NCBI RefSeq assembly: GCF_031769215.1
Contig: NW_026781979.1
Coordinates: 62,001 to 126,000, forward strand
Length of the DNA: 64,000 nucleotides
Direction: 5' to 3'
DNA from: Ylistrum balloti
Lineage: Eukaryota
Shown one piece after another: positions 44,012-64,000 of this stretch; position 1 is the stretch's first letter, and each line of letters opens with the position of its first letter. Under the pieces are notes generated by a model. It searched no databases, was not told the DNA's origin, and was given only the letters and a program-made list of their open reading frames with translations. The position numbers and the translations under genes are program-made.

Positions 44012-47000
44012 ATGCAACGATCGATTACGTAATGTCACATTTTACTGTTATGAATGTGTTACTATGTGTATACCATATGCTTTGTCTGTATTGAATTATT
44101 GCAGTTACGACTTCAGTAATGTTACCTTAAGGCTTAAGCGAATGCACACATTCTGGTCTGAAAGGAATATATTAGTAAAATTCTAAAACCAGTATTTCAT
44201 TTATTATGATGTAGACTGTGTTATGAGAAGAATTTTGAAGGGATCGTTTTTGCTTACTTAAAAACATAAATGGGGAAGCACACGTTTATTTAAAATATAT
44301 GCGATGTACATCTTGTATAACTAGACTAATGTTTTCCCTCCAAGGTGCATCACCAGGGCTCTCACACCCCATTTTGGGACTGGGGCCCGGGGCCTTTAGA
44401 ATTGGGGAAAATAACGTTGATTTCCTTAGAAGTGGGGAATTTGGGGTCTAAATTTGGAAAAAAAATACTAGTTTGCATTGGGAATATTCGGCCCCAAATC
44501 TGGCAGATCGAGAGCCCTGATCTCGGACCAGAATTGTGTTCCTTAGTTTGCTTAATCAGAACATAATTGCAGGTTCGTACATTGTGACCAGTTATCTGTT
44601 TAATCGAAAATCATATCGATTTTTATTGACCTTTGATATAATTATTGTAGTATAGATATTGAGAGTACAGGTCACCTCACTTATCCTGACTAATGGGAAT
44701 TTCTATTTAGTCCAGCGGTACATTATCTTTGAAGATACTGAAGGATTGCTGTTTCATTCCCCAGGAGAGGCAAACTTTTTTTCATTGCCAATGATTACTC
44801 CAAAGGTAAAACCCGTTGGAGATGGAGATGCCCTTTGCAGATATAGTCTTGGTTATTTTTGTCTTTGGGGTCAAAGACTTTGTGACGGAGGGGGTAGTTT
44901 CAAATTTATGAGAAAAAATTGCACTTGTAACAGTGGCTGGAGGAAACATCTTTTCAGTCAAGTGGTAGTGTCCAGAGCATATTTTATTACTCCTCCCTAT
45001 TACTGTCCAAAAGCATGTGGAGTTTTTGCATAGTGGTTAAATTTCCTTGTACCTGTAATGGATAGCACACATGCCTTTCATCAATGTATCCCAGGGTTTG
45101 ATTTTAACAATTTACTTGTTTAGACTTGGAAAGGAATAGGATCAGGTGCCCAACCCATCAGTCAATTGACAAAGGATATTCCAACATTCTCTCACATTAT
45201 TATTAAAGTTATTGTAGTTATTGCAGAAAACTGTAAGAATAAGCTCTTTCGTGTGTTGTTAAGATTGGGAAAATTTCCATAATATTTATGAAATCCACCT
45301 ATCCCCGTTTATAAGATAAAATATTTATAAAATGCTATTAAATCATTAAAGTTACTATTTTGTAAGTCATCCTCGATACTCTTAGGGTTGCAGTGACTTT
45401 CGCTCTCTGCACTCATGGAACATGTCATGGCAAATTTGAAGGCATAAGCAAAGTAATTTTATTGGTTCTAGGAACAAACAACTGACAAATCAGGGTTATA
45501 GCTCCTTTTGAGGGTATCAGTGGAGTGATATCTAACCTCAAAGCCACAACAATACACTGTAATGTGACCTCAAGTTCAATTTATGTAGGATTAAACTAGT
45601 ATTTTTTTTTTGTCCATGTGTTGCACACCTTCAGTTTTGCCATGACATGTCCAAGGGAAGCAGAGCACAAGTAACGCCTGGAGTATTGAGGATATTCGTA
45701 GGTTAAAGTGATGTTTTAAATAATAAAAAATGACTTCATTACTTCTAATTTCAGGTTGATTTTCATTTTGAAATAAAAACTTTAAAATTTATGAACAGCT
45801 GACATAGATATAGCGGTTTTTACTTGTATTATGGCTGTAGATTGATATTCTGAGAAAATGTTTTTCCTGATTGTTTTCTTGAATGTATGTTTAGTATTTT
45901 AATTACAATTTTATTATTTAGTTATTTTCTGTGTTTCTTATAATTACAGGGCATTCTTTGCTTCACCAAAGGTGAAGAACAAGGAGGAAGAAAAGACTTT
46001 AGAACAGAAGGATTCCAAAAAGTATGTCAATATTATATGAATTGAAAAGAGGTGAAGATTCAAAGTTTCAACTTAAAATTATGTATCTATTCCTGAGTCA
46101 AGATGAATTTTTATGATTGGAATATATTCACCAACTTGTAGATTCCAGACATTTTTTTTTTAAATTTCAATGAAAATTGACACTATTATTCAGTAAACAA
46201 ACACATCTGAAATGATGGTGGTTTTCAAGGTGGAGATCATGAAAATTTTCCGATGGTTTACTTTGAATTGATTTTAATGAGATACTTCCGACTCTAAACA
46301 CATGAACAATAAATATATTTTTTGGTTTTAAGGTTGAGGACTTTACAGGTGAATGGTCACAAAGGATCTTCATATTTCATTCTCACTGATATTGTCGAAT
46401 CACAATAATTAGTAGTGGAGACAGAAAAAAAATCCATTTGCTTTCAAATTTAATTTTTAATACTCAATATATATTAAAAGTTTTATCACTTAAGGTATTA
46501 GGGGTGTAATTAAGAACCACATTCTCTGACCTTAGCAATCTTCTGTTAATGTTACAATAAGGCATAGTCAACTTGTTAAACCTAGAGCAAAAAACATACA
46601 AATATGTAAGCACTGACAGAAAAAGAATGGGGCAAAAAATTGCAATTTACTTTGGTATAGAAATAAATAGGCCTAGACATACTGTAAGTATTAAGCCGAG
46701 TGAAATGGGTCTTGTGTGTTGATGACAACTTCCCAGTATCCAAAAATGGAACTTATCATCACTAGGGTTCTGTTATATGGACCAGTATACCTATCATTAA
46801 CAATTGTCATAAGGAAATGAAGGAAGATGGGGGCTCTCTGTACAATCTTTGCCACATGCCACGATGTCCAACACAATATATCACAGTGGTAAAACTAGGC
46901 CCACTCAATAACACATTTTCAAACTAAGTAAGTTTAAAGTTTTTAAAGCATTCAATTTGTGGCATGGAATCCTATTTCTTTCTGAATTTTGTGATCCCAG

Positions 47001-50000
47001 TCCAAAGTACAAACTTTCCTTGACTGTTGCTTAGGCATTAGCCATCACAATTTTCAAGGGGTGGCCTTTGCCAGATTCCAGTAAATACGATTGATCGTGC
47101 AAAGAGACTTCATATTTTCATGTGTGTGGAATGGATCACTAATGAATCTATACATGTTCATTGCTGAATTGATTTTTTTCTCTTTTTAAATAACTCAAAT
47201 TCAGTTCAAAATAAATTCAAAAGTTTGAAAATAGCGTTCTTTTGTTTTAAATTGCTGTTGATATCTCACAGTAAAAGTCACTCTGTGCCATATGTACCCC
47301 TTATGTCATTGCACCCTCATCAGTGCCCAGTATGACTAACAACTTGTCAGTTAAAAATAAAAGTGTGGATACAATTACAATGTGTCTTACTTTCCATGTG
47401 ATTTACACTTCTGACTTATAATTGTAGCTTTTTAGCTGATCTTGTTGAATACAATGTTTAAAATTCTCTGTTCTTCTGTCCATAGAAAGATTTGTCCAGA
47501 CAACTCTTCTTAACTTTGTCCACAGGAATATTGGTCATTATGTTAGATGTGCATGCAAGGTTTATTAAGCAAAAATTATGGTTGTCATGGGCAGGCAGTT
47601 ACAGGGGTACCATTTTCAAAAAAACATATGATGTTATTTGGTTGCTATGGTAACCATATAAGAGGTTGCTATGGTAACCATATAAGACCCATGATTAGAC
47701 AGATCTTTCCCAAACATCTAATGATGTGGACCAATTTCAGTGAAACTACACAGAAATGTTAGGAATTTAGTAGGTATGCAAATGTGCATGCAGGTTTTTT
47801 TTTATTTAACAGAAGTTTGGGTTGCCATGGTAACATCACTATACACAGGTTTTCATATAAAGTGCCATTACTTAGCCCTTTCATTGATTTTATTTAAATT
47901 TGATTAAATGCTATAGCTTTTATGGTCTCTAATTTGACATAAAAAGTGTTCCAACACCATTATGATGGCAATATTAAGGAGTCTTTTGATTGGTTGAAAT
48001 TAAGATATTATTTGATTTAGTTGAAAATTGGTATGAAAAGGTTATAAATGCTAGATGAATGCCTCTTGGAGGAATCTTGTTCAGACAACCTCTCCTAATC
48101 TATTGTTGATAAGGAAGCAGGAGGGGAGGGGGTATTAGTTGTATTTAGTTTAGTTAAATGTGGCAAATCGTAAAATTCTAATGTTTGTTATGTTGCTGTA
48201 ATTTATTATGTAATTTCAGAAATGTTAAAAAGAAATCTCCTCTGAAGCCTAAAAATTCTCCCCTACCAACAAAAGACTTGGATTCTCCAGTCAAAGCTAC
48301 CAGCAAAAAGAAAAGTCGAGCTCGAATAATAGAGAGTGATGATGATGAAGAGGAGGAAGAAAACACCAAGGAGCCAGAGGCCATGGAAACGGAGGAAACA
48401 GAGGAAACAGACCAGACAAAAGATGTAAATAGGAGTTTGTTTAAGTATTATATGTAGTTTTGGTAATGACTCTCAAATACTTAGATATATTTACTTCATT
48501 TGAAATTGGGGTTATATAGTATTCGACTAGTGTTTCTGTGCGTTGGTCTCTTAGTTGATGTTTTATGTATAAACATCAAACTTCGGAAATTGGTAGGACA
48601 TCTGAAGGTGGTGTATGGCATACTGAAAGTGGGTCACTGTGACCACTTTTTTAACTATGATTAACTTTGATTGTGATTATTAAAAAAGATAAGCATACTA
48701 GTAGTTGCCGGAGGATATCTAGGCCACTTTTTTCATTGAAGTATATGGCCTAAAGACTTCAGTGAGTGAAGATACTCCATTGAAAGGTAGTGTCTATGAA
48801 GGAACACATATTCTGGATATCCATGAAGCCCACACAACAAGTTCATGGATCTAATTCAAGTGCTAGTTTCAAGTTGGTCTGAAGGCATTTTTATCTTCCA
48901 TTTTAGAAAGAAATGACTGATGAAAAGGATGAAAAGGATAAAGAGAATGATGGAAAAGAAGAGGACTCTGGTATCTCATCACAGTCTTCTTCAGAAGTTA
49001 CAGCTGCCTCTCCAGTTGCTAAATCACCATTTGGAATTCCTGTTAGGAAAACTGGTTTGTAAACATTTTTAAAGATACTCCAGTTGAAACTGGGAAACAT
49101 TACAGCCTTTCATCAAAATTAGATCCATTAATGCGAGTCCTGAGTCCTGTACTCATGGAATTTGAATCGTAGAATTCCTGGATATACTTAAATTTTCATT
49201 GAGGGAACCATTGTTTTTAGCAATGAAATTGATAAAGACTTGTGTAAACTGTAGATTGCTCAATGTATTAAGATAACATCTTCCAACTCACTGATAATAA
49301 GTCATTCGAATTTTTATCTGTATTTAATCCTTGTACATACCAGATTTTTATTTGCGTTAATGTAATGATGACTTGGACAGAAAAGTGCACACTGCATATG
49401 TATAGTGTACACTTAAATAGGTTAAAATCATTCCTTGATACTTAGATGATGTTTTTTTTACTTATTTCCAGCTAGGAAATCCATGGGTAACAAAAGAAAG
49501 ACTTTGAACTATGATAATGAGAACAAGACACCATCCAAGAAAAACAAAGTCAGTACAGTGGAAGGAGAGGCTAAAGTAGTCGATAAATCACCTGACACAG
49601 AAAAATCTACAGGAGAAAAGGAAATGTTAGAACAGTCTAAATCAAAAACAGATTCTGTAAATGTTGAAGTGGATGATAATAAAAAGGAATTGGTATTGGA
49701 CGAAAAAGAAGTTGATACAGAAAAGACTGATTCACATGATATTGAAATGAAGGTATATTGTCTCAAAATTCTCTTTAGATATAATAATAATCTATTCTGG
49801 TCACTAACTATCTGTCAAGGTATCACAAATATATTTCCCTCATATAAATCAGTATGGTATACTCTCTCAGCTTTTGGTTCTATCTTAATAAACGACATCA
49901 GGTGGTGAGTATTAAAATTGTTCAAATAGACAAATTGACCCCGCTAAGTAAACTCAAATGAGTTGATTCAAAATGGAAAATATGGTTTTTGAGGTCACTC

Positions 50001-53000
50001 CAGCACTAAGAACTTGGTTTTTAGGATATGGAAAATGTTACGTATTTCAATACCCAAAAACACATTTAACATGCTGGGCATGTAGGGATAAATTTGCAAT
50101 ATGATAAAATGAGCTTCTTGGATATCAAAGTCAGTCAGCTGCTATGAAACTAAAGTATCAAGGTTTCTGTAAAAAGAAATGTAAAGATTTTGTTATTTCA
50201 GTCTGATGAAGAGCCGAGTGAAGAGAAAACAAGCAAAAAAGGCAATGCAAAAACTTCACCAAAAAACAAAAAGGATTCAGAAAAAAAGAAAAAGCAATCG
50301 CCTAAGGAGAAAAAAGAGAAAACGCCTAATGTTAAAAAAGAAAGTAAGAAAACAAATTCCAAATCTAGAAAAGGATCAGCAGAAGCAAGTCGACCTGCAT
50401 CAGACACGGAAATTGACAAAACAGGTGAGAACTGTTCTCCAAAATGTGTAATTTGCTCGAATGACGAAGAAACTAAAAACTATCTTAAAAACCTTTGTAA
50501 TGTCCAAACCTATGTATTGTATGTTGGTACGTTTTGGGGATGAAAATACTGAAATATGCTTCTACTTGCATGATGTGGGCACCCAAATTTTTAGTCAAAT
50601 AATGATCTCAGGATGTCATGAAATCAATCTCAGAATATTCAGCTAACATATATAGTGATACAAAGTCCAAAACTTGTTAGTGTTCTCTTCAGAATTTGTT
50701 TTTATCTCATTTGTTGACTTTCAATTACCTTGTTCCCTTCAGTTGGAGGTACATTACAACTGATGAATGAAGCTGCCTAATATTTGTGTACTTCTTGTTT
50801 GTTTTCATTGACATTTGACATGTTCTACTGTATCATACACTTACCTATCCAATTAACCTAGATGTATTTATCTTGTGAACAAAAACAATTCTCATACTAG
50901 ACCTGATCAACAGTGTTCAGTGTTGAAATCAATCACACAACTAATTATTACCTATTAATGGCCAAGCCAGGTAATTGTGATTTTGGTGGGTCAAGTTTTC
51001 TAGAGTCAAGATATCTCGCTGTCACATTGTGTGCACTCTAACTGACATGACTTGAGGACCCAACTTTGTGTATGCAAGTGATTGGTTTATGGAGCACAGA
51101 ATGCACTGTAGGCATGGATATGTATATCAGGGCTCTTGATTTGCCAGATTTGGGGCCGAATATGCAAAATAGTATCTTTTTTTCCCAATTTAGACCCCAA
51201 GTTCTCCCAATTCTAAGGAAAACACCATTATTTGTCCCAATTCTAAGGGCCCCAGCCCCCAGTCCCAAAATGGGGTGTGAGGGCCCTGTATATTGTCAGA
51301 TGAATAAATGATAGTTCAGTTTAAAGATATGCTTCGTAAACACCAATAAGACTGATTTTGATAAATAATAAATTGCATCCTTAATCTGATAAGTCTCATT
51401 CCACAATCCGCATACAAATACGTAAACCCTAACTTCTACCAATAAACATGAAAATGGACATGTGCTCAAAAAACAATAATTTCATAATCTACATAATTTT
51501 TAATGTTCCTAACAGGCCACTGTCTACCAATCGTTAATTTCCTGTCTTGCTAGTTACTATCACATTTTGAAACACTTGTCCTGATTTTGGTTGATATTGA
51601 CTCTCATTGTTTGCATTAATTTATACAATGATTGCCATATTTATTTTTGTAATTCATAAGGAAATCATCAAATCCTTCTTGTGTCAGTTTTGCTTATCAG
51701 ATAATCCCCAAAATCAATGACAGCACTCGCACAGAATCTTCAATTTTTCCTTAAAGAAAAAAATGAAAAATCCTGTAGTCAATTTGGTCCTTGCATTTCT
51801 CAATAAAAATATGCTCCCATTGCAAGGGTTTTTACTGTATACATTCTCTTCCCTTTAAATTGGACATGTTGTAAAATGCTATACTTACTGTAAATAAGCT
51901 GTCTGGAGTGGCAAATGTTAGTAGTTAATGCTTGACTAAACTTGTTAATGTAGATTTCCAATAGACTCAATCTTCAGTTCAGTATGATAAGAACTAGTGA
52001 ATTAAGATGTGAAAGAGAAAAAATGTGATATATTAACATATTTGATGGTTTCAAACTAAGTTTTGAAGATTTAAATACAATATATTCCTCAAGAATTGAC
52101 ATGATGCCTAGCAGTTTTAGATAACATTGCTTTGTAACATTGATGAAATGTATGCTGTTGTGACAGGCACGTAGTAAGAACTATAACACGGAAATAATTT
52201 ACCTATTTTATTGTAAAGTCAAAATGATTGTTAAAATCTACCTGTGTTTGTAGTTAGACTAGTGGAAGGATGAAATGTGGATAAGTTAATAAAATCTACT
52301 TGTATTTGCAGTAAGGTTAGTGGAAGGATGAAATGTGGATAAGTTAGATTGATTAAAATCTACCTGTATTTGCAGTAAGATTAGTGGATGAAATGTGGAT
52401 AAGTTAAAGTGATTAAAATCTACCTGTATTTGCAGTAAGATTAGTGGATGAAATGTGGATAAGTTAAAGTGATTAAAATCTACCTGTATGTGCAGTAAGA
52501 TTAGTGGAAGGATGAAATGTGGATAAGTTAAAGTGTGTATTTGCAGTAAGATTAGTTAAATGTGAATAAGTTCGAGTGATTAAAATCTACCTGTATTTGC
52601 AGTAAGATTAGTGGAAGGATGAAATGTGGATAAGTTAATAAAATCTACTTGTATTTGCAGTAAGGTTAGTGGAAGGATGAAATGTGGATAAGTTAGAGTG
52701 ATTAAAATCTACCTGTATTTGCAGTAAGATTAGTGGATGAAATGTGGATAAGTTAAAGTGATTAAAATCTACCTGTATTTGCAGTAAGATTAGTGGAAGG
52801 ATGAAATGTGGATAAGTTAAAGTGATTAAAATCTACCTGTATTTGCAGTAAGATTAGTGGAAGGATGAAATGTGAATAAGTTCGAGTGATTAAAATCTAC
52901 CTGTATTTGCAGTAAGATTAGTGGAAGGATGAAATGTGGATAAGTTAAAGTGATTAAAATCTACCTGTATGTGCAGTAAGATTAGTGGAAGGATGAAATG

Positions 53001-54410
53001 TGGATGATATGGGCCAATAAAAGTGTATCCTTGCTTTCAACATATTTATACCAAGAATAATTCGTATACATTTTATAATATTTTACAATTTTTTTCCAGG
53101 GGATGAAGAAGAAAAAGCAGAAGAACCAAAAGAAGAAAAGAGTGTTTCTGTAAAGGAAGAACCCAAAGCTTCTGTTCACAGCTTCTTTGGTGAGGATATA
53201 ATTGAAAGAGATTTTTTGGTTTGGCTTATCTCTTTAGAAACATGGTACAAGCCTTTCAGGAGGATGTATTCATTTCTGGAATTTTCCTCTCAACTCATTT
53301 CAATTCAATACATTGTAAAAGCATGTGACAAAAGTTATCTCCCTTACACTGCAATATTTTAATGTTGTATTATGGATTCTTGTTTTTCAGAAGTAGATGT
53401 TATCAATTGTTATAACATTTATATGAATAAAGCATTGGAATCTTTACAGGGAGCTCTGACAGATCATTACAAATCAAAAGATAATCTAGAATTTAAAACT
53501 CATATTTATATGTTCATGTCATATTTTCTACTTTTATAAAAAAATATTTTTGGAAAAGCAAATGATGTCTTAAAATTCTTCTTTCTTGTTAAAGAGAAAT
53601 CTGACCTCAAATTAGCTGTTCGGTTTAATTAATCCTTTGACTTATGTATATTTTACTTGCCACATTTTCTCCTTAAATCATACTTTAACCATTTAGTAGT
53701 TTTATGGTATAAAACGAAAAAAGCAATACACAAAAGACAAACTGGTGAATGTTTTCTTTTCATTGAAAATTTGAATATCAGCACAATGAAAAAACAGTAT
53801 CGTGCTGGCAATATTGGTTTTATTCATCATCACTGAAATGTTATTTACAAAGTTGAAATTGAAAAGTGTTAAAAAAAGGAATTAATTTCTCCTCAAATTT
53901 TAAGTCAGATTTACCAATTTTATGAGATTAAATAATCTCAAAGTAAGATTAAGCTATTCATTGAAAATAAATGAAAACATCTTTAGCAGTTTAACTCCCA
54001 TAAGTGAAATGAGGAAAAATCTTCCAACAATTATCTATTAGATAGAAGTTATTAAGTCTGTAATTTTAGTTTGCCATTTGTCAAGTTAGTAATTTAGCAA
54101 TAAACTTCACCTGGATCTTCTGTGAAGGTCACAGACATGAGATATGTCGGTAAATAGCATTGAATGATGTGTGATACTGTCTATTTAACCTCTTTTTGGT
54201 ATATAATTGTATTATTTTTGTTGTAAATATCTTAAATTGTTCAGCTCCAAGGAAAACCACTGTCAAGACAGAAGAAATCACAGAGGACAGCAAGTCCGAG
54301 GAGAATAAAGATAAAGCAGTGAAAGAAGATAAGAAAGAAGATGACAGTAAAAAGAAAGAGGACGTCAAGAGTGAAGAAAAAGAAAAATCAGAGAAGAAAG
54401 AACAATTAAT
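44012..54410 (+). CDS. LIG1: DNA ligase 1, N-terminal regulatory region (first 8 coding exons, about 400 aa). The gene continues past the window end.
   Basis: Exons 44012-44028, 45950-46021, 48220-48424, 48907-49054, 49472-49752, 50202-50424, 53100-53189, 54245-54410, with phases consistent. Splicing gives the PIP box MQRSITAFF (human MQRSIMSFF), DSPVK..ARIIESDDDEE, SPFGIPVRKTARKS (human SPSGIPKRRTARKQ) and SVHSFFAPRK (human TLSSFFTPRK). The catalytic domains were not seen in the window. Confidence 0.88.
44354..44519 (+). mobile_element. MITE, TIR CAGGGCTCTC/GAGAGCCCTG, LIG1 intron 1
   Basis: 10-bp perfect TIR. Colinear with the reverse complement of 51128-51288. Confidence 0.8.
47429..48081 (+). 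mobile_element. Degenerate HINE-like element, LIG1 intron 2
   Basis: Begins ttttagctgatc and ends ctagatgaatgcctcttggaggaatcttgtt. Internal repeated ggttgc(t/c)atgg(t)aac motif, including a 24-bp duplication. Confidence 0.5.
51128..51288 (-). mobile_element. MITE, same family as 44354-44519, inverted orientation, LIG1 intron 6
   Basis: cagggctcttg...tgagggccctg flanked by tat|...|tat. The reverse complement aligns by eye over the full length with the intron-1 copy. Confidence 0.8.
52236..53007. repeat. About 64-bp minisatellite (58-64 bp variants), about 12 copies
   Basis: aaaatctacctgtatttgcagtaagattagtggaaggatgaaatgtggataagttaaagtgatt repeated. Confidence 0.93.
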
Positions 54411-55133
54411 GTGAGTTTTTGATATTTTTTTTATTTATTTTTCTAAATGATTTGATCAATGATGCTATATTACTAATATCTATCTAATTCACTAACATCA
54501 CATAAATTATCTTTACACAGACAAACTGAGATCAGCTACAACAATGAAACACTTGATAGTATATAAATATGCTCACAACCTGTACATGAATTCAATAAGT
54601 CTTAAGATGGGACATCTGTCCTAAATTATGATGCACATTTTGTATGAACACATGTAGTATTGTTAAGATACCCATGACGGGACATAATGTCTCACATATT
54701 TTCCTCCTCGTTCCATGTGTAGCAGGGTTGCAAAGTCCATTTCCTTTCTTACTGTGAATTCCAGTCAAGAGAATTTGGCTATTTCAATATTTACTTACCA
54801 AGTTTTTATTGATTATATAAATACACAGATCTAACACCTTAACCAGGAAGCAAGAAGAGACTGCCATAGTCACATTCTTTAAATTTCTCTTTGGGATTGG
54901 ATCAAACAACAATATACTATAACATCAATTACATTCAGACATAGATCTACACCTTCAACTTATATCATTACAAATGGAGGACATTTAATGGTTTGTCTTT
55001 GAATACCATATGTATTTCATGGGAAATATCAAAGACGTTAGCATATTTTTTCATACAAGTGACACCTATATTTAGTCAACAAGAAACTGTTTATTACATT
55101 TTGGGAAAAAAAGTACATCATCACAGATAATGA

Positions 55134-55705
55134 TATAAGATATCTTACATTGTCAGCACATTTTTTTATCAGAATGAAAATTTCTCAAAATTCGCTGACA
55201 AAAATATAAGATATCTTACATTGTCAGCACATTTTTTTATCAGAATGAAAATTTCTCAAAATTCGCTGACAAAAATATAAGATATCTTACATTGTCAGCA
55301 CATTTTTTTATCAGAATGAAAATTTCTCAAAATTCGCTGACAAAAATATAAGATATCTTACATTGTCAGCACATTTTTTTATCAGAATGAAAATTTCTCA
55401 AAATTCGCTGACAAAAATATAAGATATCTTACATTGTCAGCACATTTTTTTATCAGAATGAAAATTTCTCAAAATTCGCTGACAAAAATATAAGATATCT
55501 TACATTGTCAGCACATTTTTTTATCAGAATGAAAATTTCTCAAAATTCGCTGACAAAAATATAAGATATACATTGTCAGCACATTTTTTTATCAGAATGA
55601 AAATTTCTCAAAATTCGCTGACAAAAATATAAGATATCTTACATTGTCAGCACATTTTTTTATCAGAATGAAAATTTCTCATAATTCGCTGACAAAAATA
55701 AATAA
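55134..55705. repeat. 71-bp tandem repeat, about 8 near-identical copies
   Basis: tataagatatcttacattgtcagcacatttttttatcagaatgaaaatttctcaaaattcgctgacaaaaa repeated. Confidence 0.95.
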
Positions 55706-57425: not shown

Positions 57426-58845
57426 TCAGTCCTCATATATCAGGTAGCCAGAGAATGTAGAGTAGTCGTTAAGAAGCGAGGAATTTTTGGACAGTTGTAT
57501 CCAAACATGATCGCCTTGTACAAGGTGTAGGATTATGGTATTACTACCCGTCCCATATCCAGCACGCTGGTCACCATGCATAGGGATCACATAATTTCCA
57601 TTCATCATTATCCAGCCGAAGGCATCAGAGTCAATGTTACATAACACATGGGCAGCAAATAGATAGGTGCCATTGACTTTACAAACAAAAGTGGAAGTAT
57701 ATGGATCAAAGCTGTCACCCAGATTGATGAACACATTGTCATAGATAACTATGGTATTCTCCAACACTGGACCAAGCCGGGATGTCCTGCTGGCTGAAAA
57801 TGCTACCTTTTTGCGTATTGCTCCAGATTGTCCTGTGTTGGAACATAAAAAAAAACCTTTGATACTTATTTTTTTATTATTCCTTGTATCACTTATTTTT
57901 TATTTAATCAATCTTTCAATAGATTATAGCATGTAGGAGTGTACACAGCTCATTCTTGTTGAATTACTTATACTATTGCAAAATACTATATATCAGATTA
58001 TTTTTGCAAAAATCTTTACAATATGTTGTTTGAAAATTTTGTAAGTTTGATGTTATCCTATTTTGATACTTTGAAAACACAAAAAAAAATCTTTATTTTA
58101 TGAAAATATACAAGTGGCAATAAAACTTGAGTGACAAGACTCCATATTAACCTCAGTTAAGTTATGTACCTTGTATTTACACAGTGAAGTTGCTAGTCAT
58201 TATGTTATCAACATGCATTAGGATTTCTGAAAATGATCCCTCAAATTGATCTGCCCTATATTGTAACTCAAGTATTGCCTAACTTAGATACCTTTCTGTC
58301 CCTTTTGACCCATGGCGCCGTAAGGGCCCACCTCTCCTCTTATTCCTTTGGTCCCACGGTTTCCGCATTCACCTTTCTGACCTTTTCTGCCCCTTCTCCC
58401 TCGATCACCTGCTTTTCCAGGTGGTCCTTGTGGGCCTTGAAATCAATAGATATTATATATTATGTATAATTTTATTCCAGTGCTGTGTCCCATGCATATT
58501 AAAGTCATGGTTTGTCTCACTCCGAATCTACAGATTTGAAATTTGTCATTTGAAAATCAAGTTCTTTACTGTGTAGAAAAAGTAGTAGTAGTAGTTACCT
58601 GGTATCCCAGAATTTCCTATCTCCCCCTTCTGTCCCTTAAACCCAGTCACACCCCTGGGTCCTTGGAGTCCCTGGTTGCCATGGGCACCTGGGGTACCTG
58701 GAGGACCAGAACAGCACTGGCAGTGAGGGGAAGCTTTGCTGTAGGTTAGGGTGGCAAGAGAACTCTTCACACCCAGCAGGAACAGGTAGTACAGTACATA
58801 CACCTTAATGTTTATATTGGCATTGGCTAAAAATTTAGGTGCCAT
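57426..58845 (-). CDS. Secreted collagen-tailed C1q-domain protein (C1qTNF/CTRP-like architecture), about 265 aa, nested antisense in a LIG1 intron
   Basis: Exons 58845-58599, 58435-58292, 57832-57426, GT-AG and in frame (798 nt). Hydrophobic leader VYVLYYLFLLGV, then CQCC, 30 uninterrupted Gly-X-Y triplets, then gC1q (KVAFSA, IVIYDNVFINLGDSFDPYTSTFVCKVNGTYLF, SNTIILHLVQGDHVWIQL, YSTFSGYLIY). The start ATG (ACA ATG G) is inferred. An alternative acceptor at 58739/58738 would imply a different first exon. Confidence 0.9.
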
Positions 58846-60139
58846 TGTCAAATTATCAAAACATTATCTATACTTTGTTTATGGTGTACTGCTTCTTCCA
58901 TATGATCGGAACGTTTATCGTGTTTGAATTCAAAGATTATTTACACAGCTTTGAACTCACTGTCATCCTTTGTAGACTGTTGACTCGGATTCACCTGAAA
59001 ATAAATACAAAACTTGAAAATATCTGGGAAATGATGCTCAATTTACCTTCCAAGCATGTCATTATTACTGTTTGACAAATTTCTGTAAATAGTAACAGTG
59101 ACCTTGACCTTTAGAAACCTGATATAATTTACCTTTGCAGAAAGTTTGCTAGTGATGTTAGTGATGCAGTACAGGAAATAATGGGACAGACATCTGTAAC
59201 ATTTTATGCTTCCCTAAAAAAATGACGGAAGCATGTAAAAAGTAAAAAAGATGATTTTTCTGCCAATCAATGTTTGTCAGACACGAGGATTGTGTCATGT
59301 GAATGGAAACCTGATAATAATTACAGATCTATGAAGACTGTTGAGATTACACTCTCTTAATGGATTTGATTTGCCTGTCACTGTGATGTAATGAAAAACC
59401 ATTCATTTAAGCTGATTCAATAAACATCAATTAAATTTAGGAAACTGTTATTGCTGAATATTGTCATATAATGTTATTAGCAAAGACTTATAGTAGGGAG
59501 ACATCTTCTCAGTTCCAGAAACCTAGCTTATACAAAATGGTATGTAGAGGGTCTTATCTATTCAAAAATCTTGACAGACTTTGATTGCTAACAGTTAGGA
59601 ATCCTAGTTCTTAAAAGACTTACGAAGAAACATTTAGTCATTTAATTACCAGTAAATTTCACCTTCGTAAAAGTGATTGAAGTCTAGACGAGTCATAAGC
59701 AGGAACTTATAGGCAGCATTCTGAATAGTTATTTATAGAAAATGATACATCTGAGTTGTTAGATAATGAAAGGAGATATGTTTATGTCAATTGTGTTCTG
59801 TATTTTATCTCCATACTTCTAAGGTTACTAGAAAACGTTTTCCTAATTGGCTTAAATGGACAGATTTATGGGTTGAATCCACAGTCATTATCTCACCATC
59901 TTGGGAAGTCAGTTAACAGTTAATGCAAAAAACTGTCTTTAGGATGTAGAAAGAAATGTTAAAAACAGAGGGTAGGGTGAAAGCCAATTTCTCTCCATAA
60001 CATTGAGAATCAGATGTTGAATACAGGGGTAGGGGGAGGAGGGGGGGGGGGGTAGAATGAAAGCCTCTTTCTCACCATAACATTGAGAATCAGATTTTCA
60101 ACACAGTGGTTAGGGTGAAAGCCACTTTCTGTTCTTTAT

Positions 60140-60700
60140 ACGGAGAATCAGATGTTAACACAGAGGTTAGGGTGCCACTCTCTGTTCTTAACAAGGAGAA
60201 TCAGATGTTAACACAGAGGTTAGGGTGCCACTCTCTGTTCTTAACAAGGAGAATCAGATGTTAACACAGAGGTTAGGGTGCCACTCTCTGTTCTTAACAA
60301 GGAGAATCAGATGTTAACACAGAGGTTAGGGTGCCACTCTCTGTTCTTAACAAGGAGAATCAGATGTTAACACAGAGGTTAGGGTGCCACTCTCTGTTCT
60401 TAACAAGGAGAATCAGATGTTAACACAGAGGTTAGGGTGCCACTCTCTGTTCTTAACAAGGAGAATCAGATGTTAACACAGAGGTTAGGGTGCCACTCTC
60501 TGTTCTTAACAAGGAGAATCAGACGTTAACACAGAGGTTAGGGTGCCACTCTCTGTTCTTAACAAGGAGAATCAGATGTTAACACAGAGGTTAGGGTGCC
60601 ACTCTCTGTTCTTAACAAGGAGAATCAGATGTTAACACAGAGGTTAGGGTGCCACTCTCTGTTCTTAACAAGGAGAATCAGATGTTAACACAGAGGTTAA
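60140..60700. repeat. 53-bp tandem repeat, about 10 near-perfect copies, with degenerate flanks from about 59960 to 60810
   Basis: ggagaatcagatgttaacacagaggttagggtgccactctctgttcttaacaa repeated. Confidence 0.95.
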
Positions 60701-62189
60701 GGTGAAAGCCAACTTCTGTCATTGACATAGCGGATCAGGTATTTAATATAGAGGTTAGGGTGAATGCCAACTTCTGTCCTTAACATAGAATTGGATGTTG
60801 AATGAAGAGGTAAGGATACATTAAAAAGATTCATGCAGTTGACCATAGTCATGTTTTAACATTTGGTCACTAATTATATAAAAACCTTCTTGTCCTGACC
60901 AAGATTGTTTAGATCTCGGATATCGGCTTATATACATACAGTCATAAGGAGTCTTGCTGTGTGAAGAAACCAAAATACCTGCTGAAAACTTGTGTTGTCT
61001 TGAAGCAAACCAAATACCTTTTCACATCTGGTTAGGGAATCAAACTCCAATTATCTTTATACTGGATGAATGATGGGGATGGTACTACCACTATGTCTTT
61101 AAATGGGTATAGTCTTTTTGTATCGGAGATTGCTTTCAATAGCATGGATAATAAGAGGTCAACATTACTTTCTCTAGTCATTGAAATAATCTTAGATATA
61201 CTACTTAAAAGACATTACTACCGGGTAGAGTGTATAACGGTTGATTGGAATGGTGAGATATAACAACGATGCTTCTACTGGTTTTGGTCTATTTGCTGGC
61301 AAGTGTTGGGTGACTGTAGCATCTTTTGATTGAAATAATGGTTTAATAACCTGTCACCAGGAACCTAATATGCTGTACATAAGTACAAGTTGTTCTAAGT
61401 TTTATAGAGTGATTACATAGGATGTTCCCCCAGGAGTGTAACTAAATCTTCAGCAGGTGTCAGCGCTATTCTGTGTGTAATTAGTTTGTCAATAGTTTAC
61501 TACTACTATAAAGTTACTTTATACAAACACATCTTCTTGTATAATTGGACTCCACCTGAATCTAATCTACTTTGATGGGTTTCTCATAAAATGTCGCTAA
61601 GCACCATTTCTATTTCCGAAGTTAAACAAGGGCATTATGAAATTGTTTTTCTCCTTCAATTCTAGATTTTAATACATGCATAAATTTATGCGTGTATTTT
61701 CAGAATAATCATCTTACACTGACAAGGTTTTCATGTTACATTTAAGTCATTTGTACTTAACATAAAATTGCAAAAGAAGGCTTTAAATCTTTGAATCACT
61801 ATGATAAAAATGTATTGCTTTCAATATCATATCTTAAATAAGATCAGAAATTGGCAGATTATATTCCTCCAATAGAAGAACCATTGTTTTACCATGTGTA
61901 GGTATGTCTAGTAACTGTTTAATAGAAGTGGTTCATTTTCCCAAGCAGTTGTATATTGCAGACAGTAGTGATAGGGAAGAGGACTGTTGTTGGAGCTTTG
62001 CAATCTTCCTCTGTTTTGTTTCAATATGATAATGTTTTGACAGAGGGGAGTATGGGCTGGACTTATGTTGCTATAAACTGTCACAACATAAGACAAGGGA
62101 TTAGCTTAACGAGACACACTAATGGAAGATATACCTGGTTTGTCTATTTATATAAACCTTTTTATATTTAAGAACAATAGTGAAACAAA

Positions 62190-62375: not shown

Positions 62376-63289
62376 TACATTGTAATAGAACTGAATTTAT
62401 ATCTCTGCTGATTTTGTTTTGAAAACTCATATCAAGCAAAATTTTACAAATACCTCAAATCTGCATGGCTTGAAAATCCAGATGGGAAAAAACAGGAAAC
62501 TAATTTTTGTAAAAATTCTTTAAAGTAAATTAAATTTTCTTTTAGTCATACAAATGTACAAGTATTAGTGCTAGGTCATCCAAAAAATTATTAACTTCTT
62601 CAGTTACTAGGAGCACAAAATTAAATTGATTCATCGATAGAGGTTATTTTGAATCTGTCAAATTTAAATAAACCCAGGTCAAGGTTTGAATTTAGAATTT
62701 TGTAGACAGTTCCTTTGAATGGTACTTTTATCATTTACTGAATTTTCATAATCCTAGTGAGAAGTAAGAAATTGATCTCCACCATTTAGTCATGGAATGC
62801 TTTGTGATGTGTGTTAATGTTGCCATGGTTACACAAAATAACACAAATTATTCTGTTGGTGATATCATGATATTAGTTATATAGGGGATGTGTATTAAGT
62901 TATATGTCAATCACTAGTCCAATCATCTTTAGTGCTAATTAAAGCTCTCCAGATCCAGATGACATAGCACCTCCGAGATAAAAAGGTCAAATTAACAGCT
63001 GTAGAGTAATAGTGATGAAAGTCATGGTAACGGTGGTGTGATTTCCCTGTTACTGAGGTTTTGATTCCACAGAAGGCTACATAGATATGAGGGTAGGTGT
63101 TAATCAGGAATGATTAGAAAAGTTGGTGATTGAGGTGAAAAATTAATGATTACCTTCTTGTGTAGACTGTATTACTTATACACATAAAGATGTCTGCAGC
63201 TTCCAGTATGAAGTGAAAGGGATGAAGTATATTGCAATGGTTAAATCTTAATTAAATTACTTTCCCCAGACATGTGGACAAACTTTGTA

Positions 63290-64000
63290 GAGGCAGTATA
63301 AGGGAGTATGTTTTGAGGTGGCAGCAGTAGGAAGTAGCATGAATAGGCAGTATAAGAAATAATGTCTTGTGGAGTGAGTAAAGCGAGTATGTATTGTAAA
63401 GGCAGTAAAAAAAGATTATATGTATGTGGAGGCGGTATAATGGAGTATGTTTTGTGGAGGCAGTATAAGGGAGTATGTTTTGTTGAGGCAGTATATTGGA
63501 GTAGGTTTTATGGAGGCGGTATAATGGAGTAGGTTTTATGGAGGCGGTATAATGGAGTAGGTTTTGTGGAGGCAGTATAAGGGAGTATGTTTTGTTGAGG
63601 CAGTATAAGGGAGTATGTTTTGTGGAGGCAGTATAAGGGAGTATGTTTTGTTGAGGCAGTATATTGGAGTAGGTTTTATGGAGGCGGTATAATGGAGTAG
63701 GTTTTATGGAGGCGGTATAATGGAGTAGGTTTTATGGAGGCGGTATAATGGAGTAGGTTTTATGGAGGCGGTATAATGGAGTAGGTTTTATGGAGGCGGT
63801 ATAATGGAGTAGGTTTTATGGAGGCGGTATAATGGAGTATGTTTTGTGGAGGCAGTATAAGGGAGTATGTTTTGTGGAGGCAGTATATTGGAGGATGTCT
63901 TGTGGCAGTACAAGGGAGTGTTTTGTGGAGGCAGTATAATGGAGTATGTTTTGTGGAGGCGGTATGATGGAGTAGGTTTTATGGAGGCGGTATAATGGAG
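63290..64000. repeat. 28-bp G-rich minisatellite running off the window end
   Basis: Two interleaved variants, ggaggcggtataatggagtaggttttat and ggaggcagtataagggagtatgttttgt. Confidence 0.93.

What the first reader, a model, noticed from the sequence alone, without database searches (positions are those of the whole stretch)
49036..49500. LIG1 carries an unusually complete histone H3 tail mimic (RKTARKSMGNK), split across an intron
Seen: exons 4 and 5 splice to P-V-R-K-T-A|R-K-S-M-G-N-K (junction within the Ala codon). Against H3 K4-Q-T-A-R-K9-S10-T-G12-G-K14, it matches T6, A7, R8, K9, S10, G12 and K14, with Arg at the K4 position. Known: human LIG1 K126 (RRTARKQ) is methylated by G9a/GLP and binds the UHRF1 tandem Tudor domain, linking replication to maintenance DNA methylation. 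The human motif lacks the S10 equivalent. Inference: the LIG1-UHRF1 link exists in this invertebrate, and the retained Ser could add an H3S10-like phospho-methyl switch or cross-react with HP1 and with H3K9me antibodies.
Basis: partly seen in the sequence, partly recalled or inferred. Interest (0 to 1): 0.72.

Follow-up and report, generated by a model that had tools for sequence, protein, structure and literature searches.

The report
Scallop DNA ligase 1 histone-H3-like motif
The scallop DNA ligase 1 gene encodes, across an intron, the same short histone-H3-like docking motif known from human LIG1; the motif is conserved across most bilaterian animals sampled and its extra serine is typical of molluscs, so it is real and probably functional but not unusual.

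Summary
**Observation: confirmed.**
- Exon 4 ends at 49054 and exon 5 starts at 49472, with GT/AG splice sites and the Ala codon split. The joined reading is SPFGIPVRKTARKSMGNKRK.
- The genome is the scallop Ylistrum balloti. No RNA run was available.
- Full-length LIG1 of Mizuhopecten (RefSeq) and a transcript-derived LIG1 of another scallop both read straight across this junction.
- The window holds exons 1-8 of a 24-exon LIG1 gene. The catalytic exons lie 15-29 kb past the window end. The species' own database protein model is cut short at the N-terminus and lacks the motif.

**"Unusually complete": not supported.**
- In 25 aligned bilaterian LIG1 proteins, R(-5), T, A, R and K are invariant.
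- Ser at +1 occurs in every mollusc seen with the motif, and also in nemerteans and Priapulus.
- Chiton, abalone, Solemya and veneroid clams match H3 equally well (7 of 11).

**LIG1-UHRF1 link: plausible but untested.**
- The genome has a G9a-type enzyme (EHMT), DNMT1, HP1 and UHRF1.
- The UHRF1 tandem Tudor methyl-lysine cage and arginine cavity are conserved.
- The invariant Arg at the "K4" position matches human R121, the Tudor anchor.

**Caveats.**
- About 115 insect LIG1 proteins lack the motif, although many insects keep UHRF1 and DNMT1.
- The human equivalent of this motif was also mapped as the nuclear localisation signal.
- The phospho-switch and HP1 ideas remain speculation.

The parts
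44012..44028 (+). LIG1 coding exon 1: start codon and first part of the PCNA-binding PIP box (MQRSIT, then AC of a split codon); donor gtaatg
   Evidence: matches the MQRSITAFF start of Mizuhopecten LIG1 P0165
45950..46021 (+). LIG1 exon 2: completes the PIP box (..AFFASPKVKNKEEEK..)
   Evidence: tblastn of P0165, 79% identity; splice model
48220..48424 (+). LIG1 exon 3: DSPVKATSKKKSRARIIESDDDEEEE block, which I recall as colinear with human [24 protein letters not shown]
   Evidence: tblastn 75% identity, E 4e-22; the human string is from memory
48907..49054 (+). LIG1 exon 4: ends ..SPFGIPVRKT plus the first base (g) of the Ala codon. Upstream half of the H3-like motif, including the invariant Arg at -5 and Thr at -3
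   Evidence: (73% identity, E 2e-14)
49055..49471 (+). Intron 4 (417 nt, phase 1, GT..AG, long pyrimidine tract before the acceptor), which bisects the motif inside the Ala codon
   Evidence: the same break point is seen in predicted isoforms of Ptychodera, Dendrobates and Biomphalaria
49472..49752 (+). LIG1 exon 5: starts ct-AGG-AAA-TCC.. = (A)RKSMGNKRKTLNY... Downstream half of the motif: Arg -1, target Lys (K150 of the model), Ser +1, Met +2, then the KRK basic cluster
   Evidence: (E 9e-20)
49036..49054 (+).
49472..49500 (+). Motif, downstream half as flagged (/A-R-K-S-M-G-N-K-R-K)
50202..50424 (+). LIG1 exon 6 (Lys/Ser/Glu-rich disordered linker)
   Evidence: tblastn 65% identity, E 6e-23
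53112..53189 (+). LIG1 exon 7 (..EEPKEEKSVSVKEEPKASVHSFF). The acceptor could instead lie 12 nt upstream. The species' own RefSeq model P0163 starts just upstream of here
54245..54410 (+). LIG1 exon 8 (APRKTTVKTEE..), the last LIG1 exon in the window. It is followed by a 24.9-kb intron that runs out of the window to the exon at C122:141297

Best explanation
The stretch is the exon 4/exon 5 junction of the DNA ligase 1 gene of the scallop Ylistrum balloti.

**Shown.**
- The spliced product carries the ortholog of the human LIG1 K126 motif, in the disordered N-terminal region between the PIP box and the catalytic core.
- The consensus is [ST]-P-x-G-I-P-x-R-[KR]-T-A-R-K-x-hydrophobic, followed by a K/R cluster.

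**Inferred mechanism.**
- The EHMT (G9a/GLP-type) methyltransferase of this genome methylates the Lys of T-A-R-K. This is K150 in my gene model.
- The methylated motif docks into the tandem Tudor domain of UHRF1. The methyl-lysine sits in the aromatic cage and the invariant Arg five residues upstream (R145) sits in the arginine-binding cavity.
- This brings UHRF1, and through it DNMT1, to sites of Okazaki-fragment ligation, as described for mammals.
- The same basic stretch (RK...KRK) probably doubles as the nuclear localisation signal.

**The Ser after the Lys.** It is the normal molluscan residue at a position that varies by lineage (S, H, Q or M). It fits the preference of G9a for a hydrophilic residue there. 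Any extra regulatory role for it is unproven.
For: **Gene identity.**
- DNA_ligase_A_N, _M and _C domain hits lie on the same strand of the same contig, 15-29 kb beyond the window end.
- The catalytic exons read like animal LIG1 and contain the KYDGERAQ active-site motif.
- A 24-exon model whose reading frame stays open through exon 23 is 84% identical to Mizuhopecten LIG1.

**Junction.** Two other pectinid LIG1 sequences, one RefSeq and one transcript-derived, read through it.

**Conservation.**
- Alignment A1 holds 25 LIG1 proteins: molluscs, nemerteans, a brachiopod, an annelid, a priapulid, decapods, a crinoid, a hemichordate, amphioxus, a lamprey, fish, an amphibian and a mammal.
- R(-5), T(-3), A(-2), R(-1) and K are invariant, and the two Pro are at least 90% conserved.
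- Nearly all of the roughly 100 full-length non-insect LIG1 proteins carry the motif.

**Fit to the writer.** The minimal G9a site is TARKSTG. R before K is essential, a hydrophilic then a hydrophobic residue is preferred after K (PMC8541646). The scallop has TARKSMG.

- Human LIG1 R121 hydrogen-bonds Asp142 of the Tudor Arg cavity (Asp142, Ala208, Met224, Trp238, Phe278).
- K126me3 sits in the cage Phe152, Tyr188, Tyr191 (+Phe237) (PMC7806715).
- The scallop UHRF1 exons keep D142, F152, A208, M224, F237, W238, F278 and Y191. Y188 is replaced conservatively by F.

**Machinery in this genome.**
- EHMT: cysteine-rich region at 64.5 bits, plus a SET domain 9 kb away on the same strand.
- DNMT1 replication-focus domain.
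- UHRF1 Tudor, PHD-like and SRA exons in one locus.
Against: - There are no transcript data from this species. Its own RefSeq protein (P0163, 762 aa) omits exons 1-6.
- Neither methylation nor binding can be tested with these tools.
- The motif does not simply track UHRF1/DNMT1. About 115 insect LIG1 proteins lack R-x-T-A-R-K, although bees and ants keep DNMT1 and UHRF1 (PMC9915587).
- Even in human cancer cells, disrupting the LIG1-UHRF1 contact left DNA methylation unchanged (PMC7585203).
- One Tudor residue next to the cage differs: human D190 is Gly in the scallop.
- The Arg cavity also binds UHRF1's own linker and polybasic region, so its conservation is not specific to LIG1.
- The human equivalent of the motif (aa 119-131) was mapped as the nuclear localisation signal (PMC2141708). 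That function alone could explain the conservation of the basic residues.
Confidence: 0.6

Rival explanations
1. Nuclear import signal only. The conserved stretch is a classical, bipartite-looking nuclear localisation signal (RK, about 8-10 residues, then KRK), and its resemblance to H3 is a by-product of basic composition. UHRF1 and EHMT play no part in invertebrates.
For: - The human LIG1 NLS was mapped to aa 119-131, the same motif, and aa 111-179 form half of the replication-focus targeting sequence (PMC2141708).
- Every ortholog has a K/R cluster 3-12 residues after the Lys.
- Insects that keep UHRF1/DNMT1 do without the motif.
Against: - Importin-type signals tolerate wide variation between their basic clusters. 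Here the non-basic Thr and Ala are invariant in 25 sequences from nine phyla, as is the exact R-x-T-A-R-K spacing.
- That pattern matches the G9a recognition site and the Tudor Arg anchor.
- Deleting the region in human LIG1 reduced nuclear localisation but did not abolish it.
- The two functions can coexist.
Confidence: 0.2
2. In molluscs the Ser after the Lys turns the motif into a full H3K9/S10-type module. A mitotic, Aurora-type kinase phosphorylates it to release readers, and the ARKS form also recruits HP1-type chromodomains.
For: - R-K-S-M fits a basophilic kinase site with Arg at -2, as at H3S10 (my own knowledge of that consensus).
- ARKS is the core shared with H3K9 and H3K27.
- The human ARKQ form binds other H3K9me readers only weakly, in the low-micromolar range or unmeasurably, so selectivity could depend on residues after the Lys (PMC7585203).
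- Ser is kept in every mollusc seen with the motif, in two nemerteans and in Priapulus.
- An HP1 gene is present.
Against: - There are no phosphorylation or binding data.
- The +1 position is the least constrained of the core: S, H, Q, M. G9a simply prefers a hydrophilic residue there, which may be all the Ser reflects.
- A review states that S10 phosphorylation strongly lowers Tudor-PHD affinity for H3K9me3 (PMC4103482). I recall other work reporting that UHRF1 is insensitive to it, so the effect on UHRF1 is uncertain.
- LIG1 binding is Tudor-only, independent of the PHD.
Confidence: 0.18
3. Artefact. The junction is not used, or the H3 resemblance is a chance match in a Lys/Arg/Ser-rich disordered region.
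For: - The donor is weak (ctg|gtttgt).
- There is no RNA from this species.
- The species' RefSeq model lacks these exons.
Against: - The same junction is read in a RefSeq protein and in a cDNA-derived protein of two other scallops.
- The reading frame stays open from exon 1 through exon 23.
- The motif is invariant across phyla.
- The shuffle probability is 0.0014.
Confidence: 0.02

Closest known systems
Human/mouse LIG1 K126 H3K9-like motif (G9a/GLP substrate, UHRF1 tandem Tudor ligand; Ferry et al. 2017 and Kori et al. 2019, as cited in PMC7585203 and PMC7806715)
   Same: - Same gene, and the same position between the PIP box/acidic block and the catalytic core.
- The same flanking S-P-x-G-I-P.
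- Identical R(-5), T(-3), A, R, K.
- A hydrophobic residue at +2 and a K/R cluster downstream.
- EHMT and a UHRF1 with a conserved Tudor pocket are present in the genome.
   Different: - +1 is Ser instead of Gln.
- -4 is Lys instead of Arg, and -6 is Val instead of Lys.
- Small residues (G, N) follow, instead of L-P-K-R.
- No biochemical evidence exists in any invertebrate that I could find.
Histone H3 tail, residues 4-14 (K9 methylation / S10 phosphorylation module)
   Same: T-A-R-K-S, G12 and K14 match (7 of 11). TARKSMG differs from the minimal G9a site TARKSTG at one position.
   Different: - The motif is internal rather than N-terminal, so the UHRF1 PHD contact with the free H3 N-terminus is impossible.
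- Arg replaces K4. This Arg is the LIG1-specific Tudor anchor that makes human LIG1 bind about 8-fold tighter than H3K9me2 (PMC7585203).
Other G9a/GLP 'histone mimic' substrates with ARK[ST] cores (G9a automethylation site, ATF7IP, H1.4 K26; PMC6172828, PMC9768651)
   Same: An A-R-K core followed by Ser/Thr. Methylation there creates a chromodomain (HP1 or MPP8) binding site.
   Different: Those are read by chromodomains, not by UHRF1 Tudor. Whether the molluscan LIG1 ARKS form gains such readers is unknown.
Classical nuclear localisation signal of human LIG1 (aa 119-131; Montecucco et al. 1995, as cited in PMC2141708)
   Same: It overlaps the same residues, and the basic clusters are conserved in the scallop (RK...KRK).
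   Different: A localisation signal does not explain the invariant Thr-Ala or the fixed spacing of the Arg at -5.

Membership tests
DNA ligase 1 (LIG1) ortholog | N-terminal PCNA-interacting PIP box (Q-x-x-I-x-x-F-F) | tested here: met
   MQRSIT|AFF across exons 1 and 2 (44012-44028, 45950-)
DNA ligase 1 (LIG1) ortholog | DNA_ligase_A_N, _M and _C domains with the KYDGERAQ adenylation motif, on the same strand and colinear with a known LIG1 | tested here: met
   Pfam hits above cut-off at C122:145.5-153.1 kb. [10 protein letters not shown] seen. A 24-exon model is 84% identical to Mizuhopecten LIG1. Two other ligase loci (C342, C177) are separate genes.
DNA ligase 1 (LIG1) ortholog | The N-terminal exons in the window are transcribed together with the catalytic exons in this species | tested here: inconclusive
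   No RNA run is available and the own RefSeq model lacks exons 1-6. Supported indirectly by the open frame and by orthologous full-length mRNAs/proteins.
LIG1 K126-type H3K9 mimic (EHMT substrate / UHRF1 Tudor ligand) | A-R-K core with Arg directly before the Lys, then a hydrophilic and a hydrophobic residue (G9a specificity) | tested here: met
   T-A-R-K-S-M; rule taken from PMC8541646
LIG1 K126-type H3K9 mimic (EHMT substrate / UHRF1 Tudor ligand) | Arg five residues before the Lys (human R121), the anchor for the Tudor Arg-binding cavity | tested here: met
   R145 of the model; invariant in 25 of 25 aligned LIG1 proteins; role taken from PMC7806715
LIG1 K126-type H3K9 mimic (EHMT substrate / UHRF1 Tudor ligand) | Writer and reader present, with reader pocket residues intact | tested here: met
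   EHMT cysteine-rich region and SET domain on C1017. UHRF1 Tudor on C383 keeps D142, F152, Y191, A208, M224, F237, W238 and F278, with Y188 to F. D190 to G is the one change.
LIG1 K126-type H3K9 mimic (EHMT substrate / UHRF1 Tudor ligand) | The Lys is di- or trimethylated in vivo, and the methylated motif binds UHRF1 Tudor | not testable with these tools
   Needs peptide methylation assays, binding assays or mass spectrometry. A complex prediction was not run because no full-length scallop UHRF1 protein could be retrieved as one sequence.
H3K9/S10-type phospho-methyl switch | Ser or Thr directly after the methylated Lys, in a basophilic kinase context | tested here: met
   R-K-S-M. Ser is present in every mollusc seen with the motif, in nemerteans and in Priapulus.
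H3K9/S10-type phospho-methyl switch | The Ser is phosphorylated, and phosphorylation changes reader binding | not testable with these tools
   No data. The literature on the S10ph effect on UHRF1 is mixed (plus my own recollection).
Classical nuclear localisation signal | Basic clusters at the position mapped as the NLS in human LIG1 | tested here: met
   RK at -5/-4 and KRK at +5 to +7. The human NLS lies at aa 119-131 (PMC2141708). Import itself was not tested.

The most novel reading that the evidence does not exclude
In molluscs, and in nemerteans and priapulids, LIG1 carries an ARKS-type rather than an ARKQ-type mimic. Methyl-LIG1 could then be read by HP1-type chromodomains as well as by UHRF1 Tudor, and could be switched off in mitosis by phosphorylation of the Ser, as at H3K9me/S10ph. 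This would be a lineage-specific regulatory layer on the replication-to-methylation link. A related possibility is that the conserved phase-1 intron bisecting the motif lets alternative splicing make LIG1 isoforms with or without the mimic, as predicted isoforms of Ptychodera, Dendrobates and Biomphalaria suggest.
Probability: 0.15. Interest if true: 0.65.

Novelty: new member of a known kind. Interest (0 to 1): 0.42.

Why it matters
**What is new here.**
- The LIG1-UHRF1 contact has, as far as I could find, been studied only in mammalian cells, where its importance is disputed.
- I found no open-access paper that treats it in invertebrates.
- The motif core R-x-T-A-R-K, including the Tudor-specific Arg anchor, is invariant in the nine bilaterian phyla aligned. 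This argues that the contact is ancient and under selection. It also gives a natural series for dissecting reader selectivity: S, H, Q or M at +1.
- Insects lost the motif while many kept UHRF1 and DNMT1.

**Practical points.**
- The Y. balloti and Pecten maximus database models of LIG1 are cut short at the N-terminus, so proteome-level screens for histone mimics would miss this motif.
- In molluscs, antibodies against H3K9me2/3 or H3S10ph could in principle recognise LIG1, because TARKS is identical.

**Scale.** For this locus alone the result is modest: an expected ortholog of a known motif.

Tried and rejected
1. **RNA evidence.** The look-up of sequencing runs returned one run, X1. Read laying showed it to be genomic DNA, with a 4.2-kb contig running through the introns. 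There is therefore no direct splice evidence.
2. **Own annotated protein.** The look-up of encoding contigs for P0163 gave no record.
3. **Primary papers.** Ferry 2017 and Kori 2019 are not in the library. Their content is cited only through papers that quote them. What I recall beyond that is marked as memory.
4. **PIP box.** A search for the box as one open stretch failed because an intron splits it. It was found after mapping Mizuhopecten LIG1.
5. **Complex prediction (UHRF1 Tudor with the LIG1 motif).** Not run. The scallop Tudor is spread over three or more exons, and the length filter of the word search prevents fetching a full-length UHRF1 from exon-sized queries. Splitting one domain into chains would not be a fair test.
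6. **Non-bilaterian LIG1 (cnidarians, sponges).** Not sampled. No seed was available, and the top-120 lists are filled by bilaterians. The age of the motif before Bilateria is therefore open, and the third protein search was left unused.
7. **Strict co-occurrence with UHRF1/DNMT1.** Rejected as a simple rule, because insects break it.
8. **Gene model details.** The greedy splice model picked a wrong acceptor for the last exon, and perhaps one 12 nt off for exon 7. This does not affect the motif.
Full report
**1. What is in the sequence**

- One search shows an exon ending ...SPFGIPVRKT plus one base (g) at 49054, followed by gtttgt.
- After a long pyrimidine tract and an AG at 49470-71, an exon starts at 49472 with ct AGG AAA TCC ATG GGT AAC AAA AGA AAG.
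- Joined, the reading is SPFGIPVRKTARKSMGNKRK, with the Ala codon split in phase 1.
- In 20,000 shuffles of the 420-residue N-terminal region, a 7-of-11 match arose in 0.14% and TARKS in 0.075%.

**2. Which gene and which organism**

- The window is C122:62001-126000 of a 648-Mb assembly.
- A database protein named 'DNA ligase 1-like [Ylistrum balloti]' (P0163) sits on a contig of 2,077,977 bases, which is exactly the length of C122. The genome is therefore this scallop.
- Pfam ligase domains N, M and C hit the + strand of C122 at 145.5-153.1 kb. The exons there read like animal LIG1, for example [39 protein letters not shown].
- Mapping full-length Mizuhopecten yessoensis LIG1 (P0165, 1082 aa) onto the window plus 30 kb of downstream sequence gives 24 colinear exons.
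- A splice model whose frame stays open through exon 23 runs from the ATG at 44012. With the terminal exon placed by the Mizuhopecten mapping, the stop lies near C122:154671.
- The model is about 1076 aa and 84% identical to the Mizuhopecten protein.
- Intron 8 is 24.9 kb. It contains the antisense C1q/collagen gene that another note of this scan (s1-240793) describes.

**3. Is the junction used?**

- No RNA run holds this stretch. The single holder, X1, is genomic DNA. X1 shows no variant within the motif.
- The species' own RefSeq model (762 aa) starts just upstream of exon 7. The Pecten maximus model starts at the Met inside the motif (KS-M-GSKRK). Both look like 5'-truncated predictions.
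- Positive evidence comes from relatives:
  - The Mizuhopecten RefSeq protein reads across the junction.
  - So does P0161, a 1061-aa protein called on a 3416-nt Logan contig. That contig can only be cDNA. It comes from another pectinid (85% identity).
- I take the junction as established by orthology. It has not been directly observed in this species.

**4. How special is the motif?**

- I collected about 120 LIG1 proteins around a Priapulus seed and about 115 around a damselfly seed.
- Among non-insect bilaterians with an intact N-terminus, nearly all carry [ST]P-x-G-I-P-x-R-[KR]-T-A-R-K.
- In a 25-sequence alignment spanning nine phyla, R(-5), T(-3), A(-2), R(-1) and K are invariant, and the two prolines are at least 90% conserved.
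- The residue after the Lys varies by lineage:

| Residue at +1 | Lineages |
|---|---|
| Ser | every mollusc seen with the motif (scallops, oysters, mussels, clams, Solemya, chiton, abalone, other snails), two nemerteans, Priapulus |
| His | Lingula, Owenia, a crinoid, a hemichordate |
| Gln | amphioxus, lamprey, most vertebrates, decapods |
| Met | spiny-rayed fish |

- Chiton, Solemya and abalone (TARKSMGGG or TARKSMGGS) and veneroid clams (TARKSIGGS) equal the scallop at 7 of 11.
- The motif is therefore real and far more than chance, but it is the ordinary molluscan form. 'Unusually complete' holds only against vertebrates.

**5. What the invariant positions say**

- The minimal G9a site is H3 6-12 (TARKSTG). 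Arg before the Lys is essential, Ala before that is preferred, and a hydrophilic then a hydrophobic residue is preferred after (PMC8541646). The scallop TARKSMG fits.
- The invariant Arg at -5 is needed neither by G9a nor by H3 mimicry, since H3 has K4 there.
- In the human complex, LIG1 R121 hydrogen-bonds Asp142 in the Tudor arginine-binding cavity, and K126me3 occupies the Phe152/Tyr188/Tyr191 cage (PMC7806715).
- This explains why LIG1K126me2 binds Tudor at 30-80 nM, against 390-520 nM for H3K9me2 (PMC7585203).
- Its invariance across phyla is the best single argument that Tudor docking, and not just basic charge, is under selection.

**6. Is the machinery there?**

- One locus (C383) carries UHRF1 Tudor, PHD-like and SRA exons. 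The best solved-structure matches are human UHRF1 Tudor chains, including the LIG1-bound entries.
- Mapped onto human numbering, D142, D145, W151, F152, E153, Y191, A208, M224, F237, W238 and F278 are kept. Y188 is Phe. D190 is Gly.
- An EHMT gene is indicated by the family-specific cysteine-rich region (64.5 bits against a cut-off of 27.5) and a SET domain 9 kb away on the same strand.
- The DNMT1 replication-focus domain and an HP1 chromoshadow domain are also present.

**7. What argues for caution**

- No insect LIG1 in the sample has R-x-T-A-R-K. The sample covers bees, ants, wasps, beetles, bugs, cockroach, termites, locust, stick insects and dragonflies. One damselfly has an unanchored ETARKRKR.
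- Many Hymenoptera nevertheless keep DNMT1 and UHRF1 (PMC9915587). Liver flukes and an amphipod also lack the motif. The motif is therefore dispensable for UHRF1/DNMT1 function in at least one large clade.
- In human cancer cells, blocking the contact did not change methylation (PMC7585203).
- The human equivalent, aa 119-131, was mapped as the nuclear localisation signal (PMC2141708). The scallop keeps RK...KRK. Import is a likely overlapping function and explains part of the conservation, but not the invariant Thr-Ala.

**8. The serine**

- However, +1 is the most variable core position, and a hydrophilic residue there is simply what G9a prefers.
- Reports differ on whether S10 phosphorylation affects UHRF1. 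A review says it strongly reduces Tudor-PHD binding (PMC4103482). I recall other work finding insensitivity. LIG1 binding is Tudor-only.
- I rate an added Ser-dependent layer at about 0.15-0.2.

**9. Verdict**

- The thing is the scallop ortholog of the known LIG1 H3K9-like motif. Its likely roles are EHMT methylation site, UHRF1 Tudor dock and import signal.
- It is a new member of a known kind. The wider pattern is more interesting than this one locus: pan-bilaterian invariance including the Tudor anchor, a lineage-specific +1 residue, and loss in insects.

Noticed in passing
window 53090-53189, compared with protein P0163: The database protein for this species' LIG1 (762 aa) begins MAKPGDEEEK.., just upstream of the exon 7 acceptor, and omits exons 1-6 (PIP box, acidic block, H3-like motif). 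The Pecten maximus model (916 aa, flagged low quality) starts at the Met inside the motif. Both look like 5'-truncated gene predictions.
   Followed up: partly
proteins P0168, P0198/P0199, P0263: Predicted LIG1 isoforms in other animals break exactly at the intron that splits the motif here. Ptychodera X2 reads KSP|ARKHM and loses GIPLRKT. Dendrobates X4/X5 read KRKT|G.. followed by an unrelated exon. Biomphalaria X2 reads KRKTA|ELPAH. The phase-1 intron in the Ala codon therefore seems ancient, and alternative splicing could remove the mimic.
   Followed up: partly
proteins P0286-P0402: About 115 insect LIG1 proteins from at least nine orders lack the R-x-T-A-R-K motif, whereas decapod crustaceans keep it (PPLRKTARKQMKRK). 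This points to a loss at or near the base of hexapods, although many insects retain DNMT1 and UHRF1.
   Followed up: partly
window 57426-58851, minus strand: A C1q-domain gene with a collagen-like Gly-X-Y stretch lies antisense inside the 24.9-kb intron 8 of LIG1.
   Followed up: partly
window 53165-53189 and 54245-54260: A second 'SFF' element (..KASVHSFF|APRK..) spans the exon 7/8 junction. It recurs in Mizuhopecten (TPVHSFFAPKK), Ptychodera (SPIHSFFAPRK) and lamprey (VMSSFFAPRK), and I recall TLSSFFTPRK in human LIG1. It is a conserved short motif in the linker, and I do not know its function.
   Followed up: no
window 44350-44525 (+) and 51080-51270 (-): Two inverted copies, well conserved over about 170 bp (roughly 85-90% identical by eye), of a short interspersed repeat lie in LIG1 introns 1 and 6. 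In the DNA run X1 the 51084-51351 bins reach a word depth of about 22,000 against about 11 nearby, so the element is extremely abundant in the genome.
   Followed up: partly
window 52231-53005, 55133-55700, 60078-60704, 63284-64000: Four intronic tandem arrays: a 60/64-bp unit just upstream of exon 7, a 71-bp unit with 8 copies at 98% identity, a 53-bp unit with 11.7 copies, and a 28-bp unit with about 26 copies that runs off the window end. A further 18-bp satellite of about 3 kb lies in the same intron outside the window (C122:133.1-136.1 kb, seen as DGLVRQ repeats).
   Followed up: no
L005/L006 (C122:149.5-150.9 kb), outside the window: The intron between the two adenylation-domain exons of LIG1 holds a long imperfect repeat. 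It reads in frame as ..QYPRQYDNPVPGTLEQLSTQESMT.. many times over. It is not part of the ligase coding sequence according to the Mizuhopecten alignment.
   Followed up: no
G000:C383:540.7-542.0 kb (L018/L019): The first Tudor lobe of scallop UHRF1 carries an insertion of about 60 residues of acidic, Asn-rich sequence between the WFEA strand and the YHV strand, relative to human UHRF1. Human D190, next to the cage, is Gly here.
   Followed up: partly
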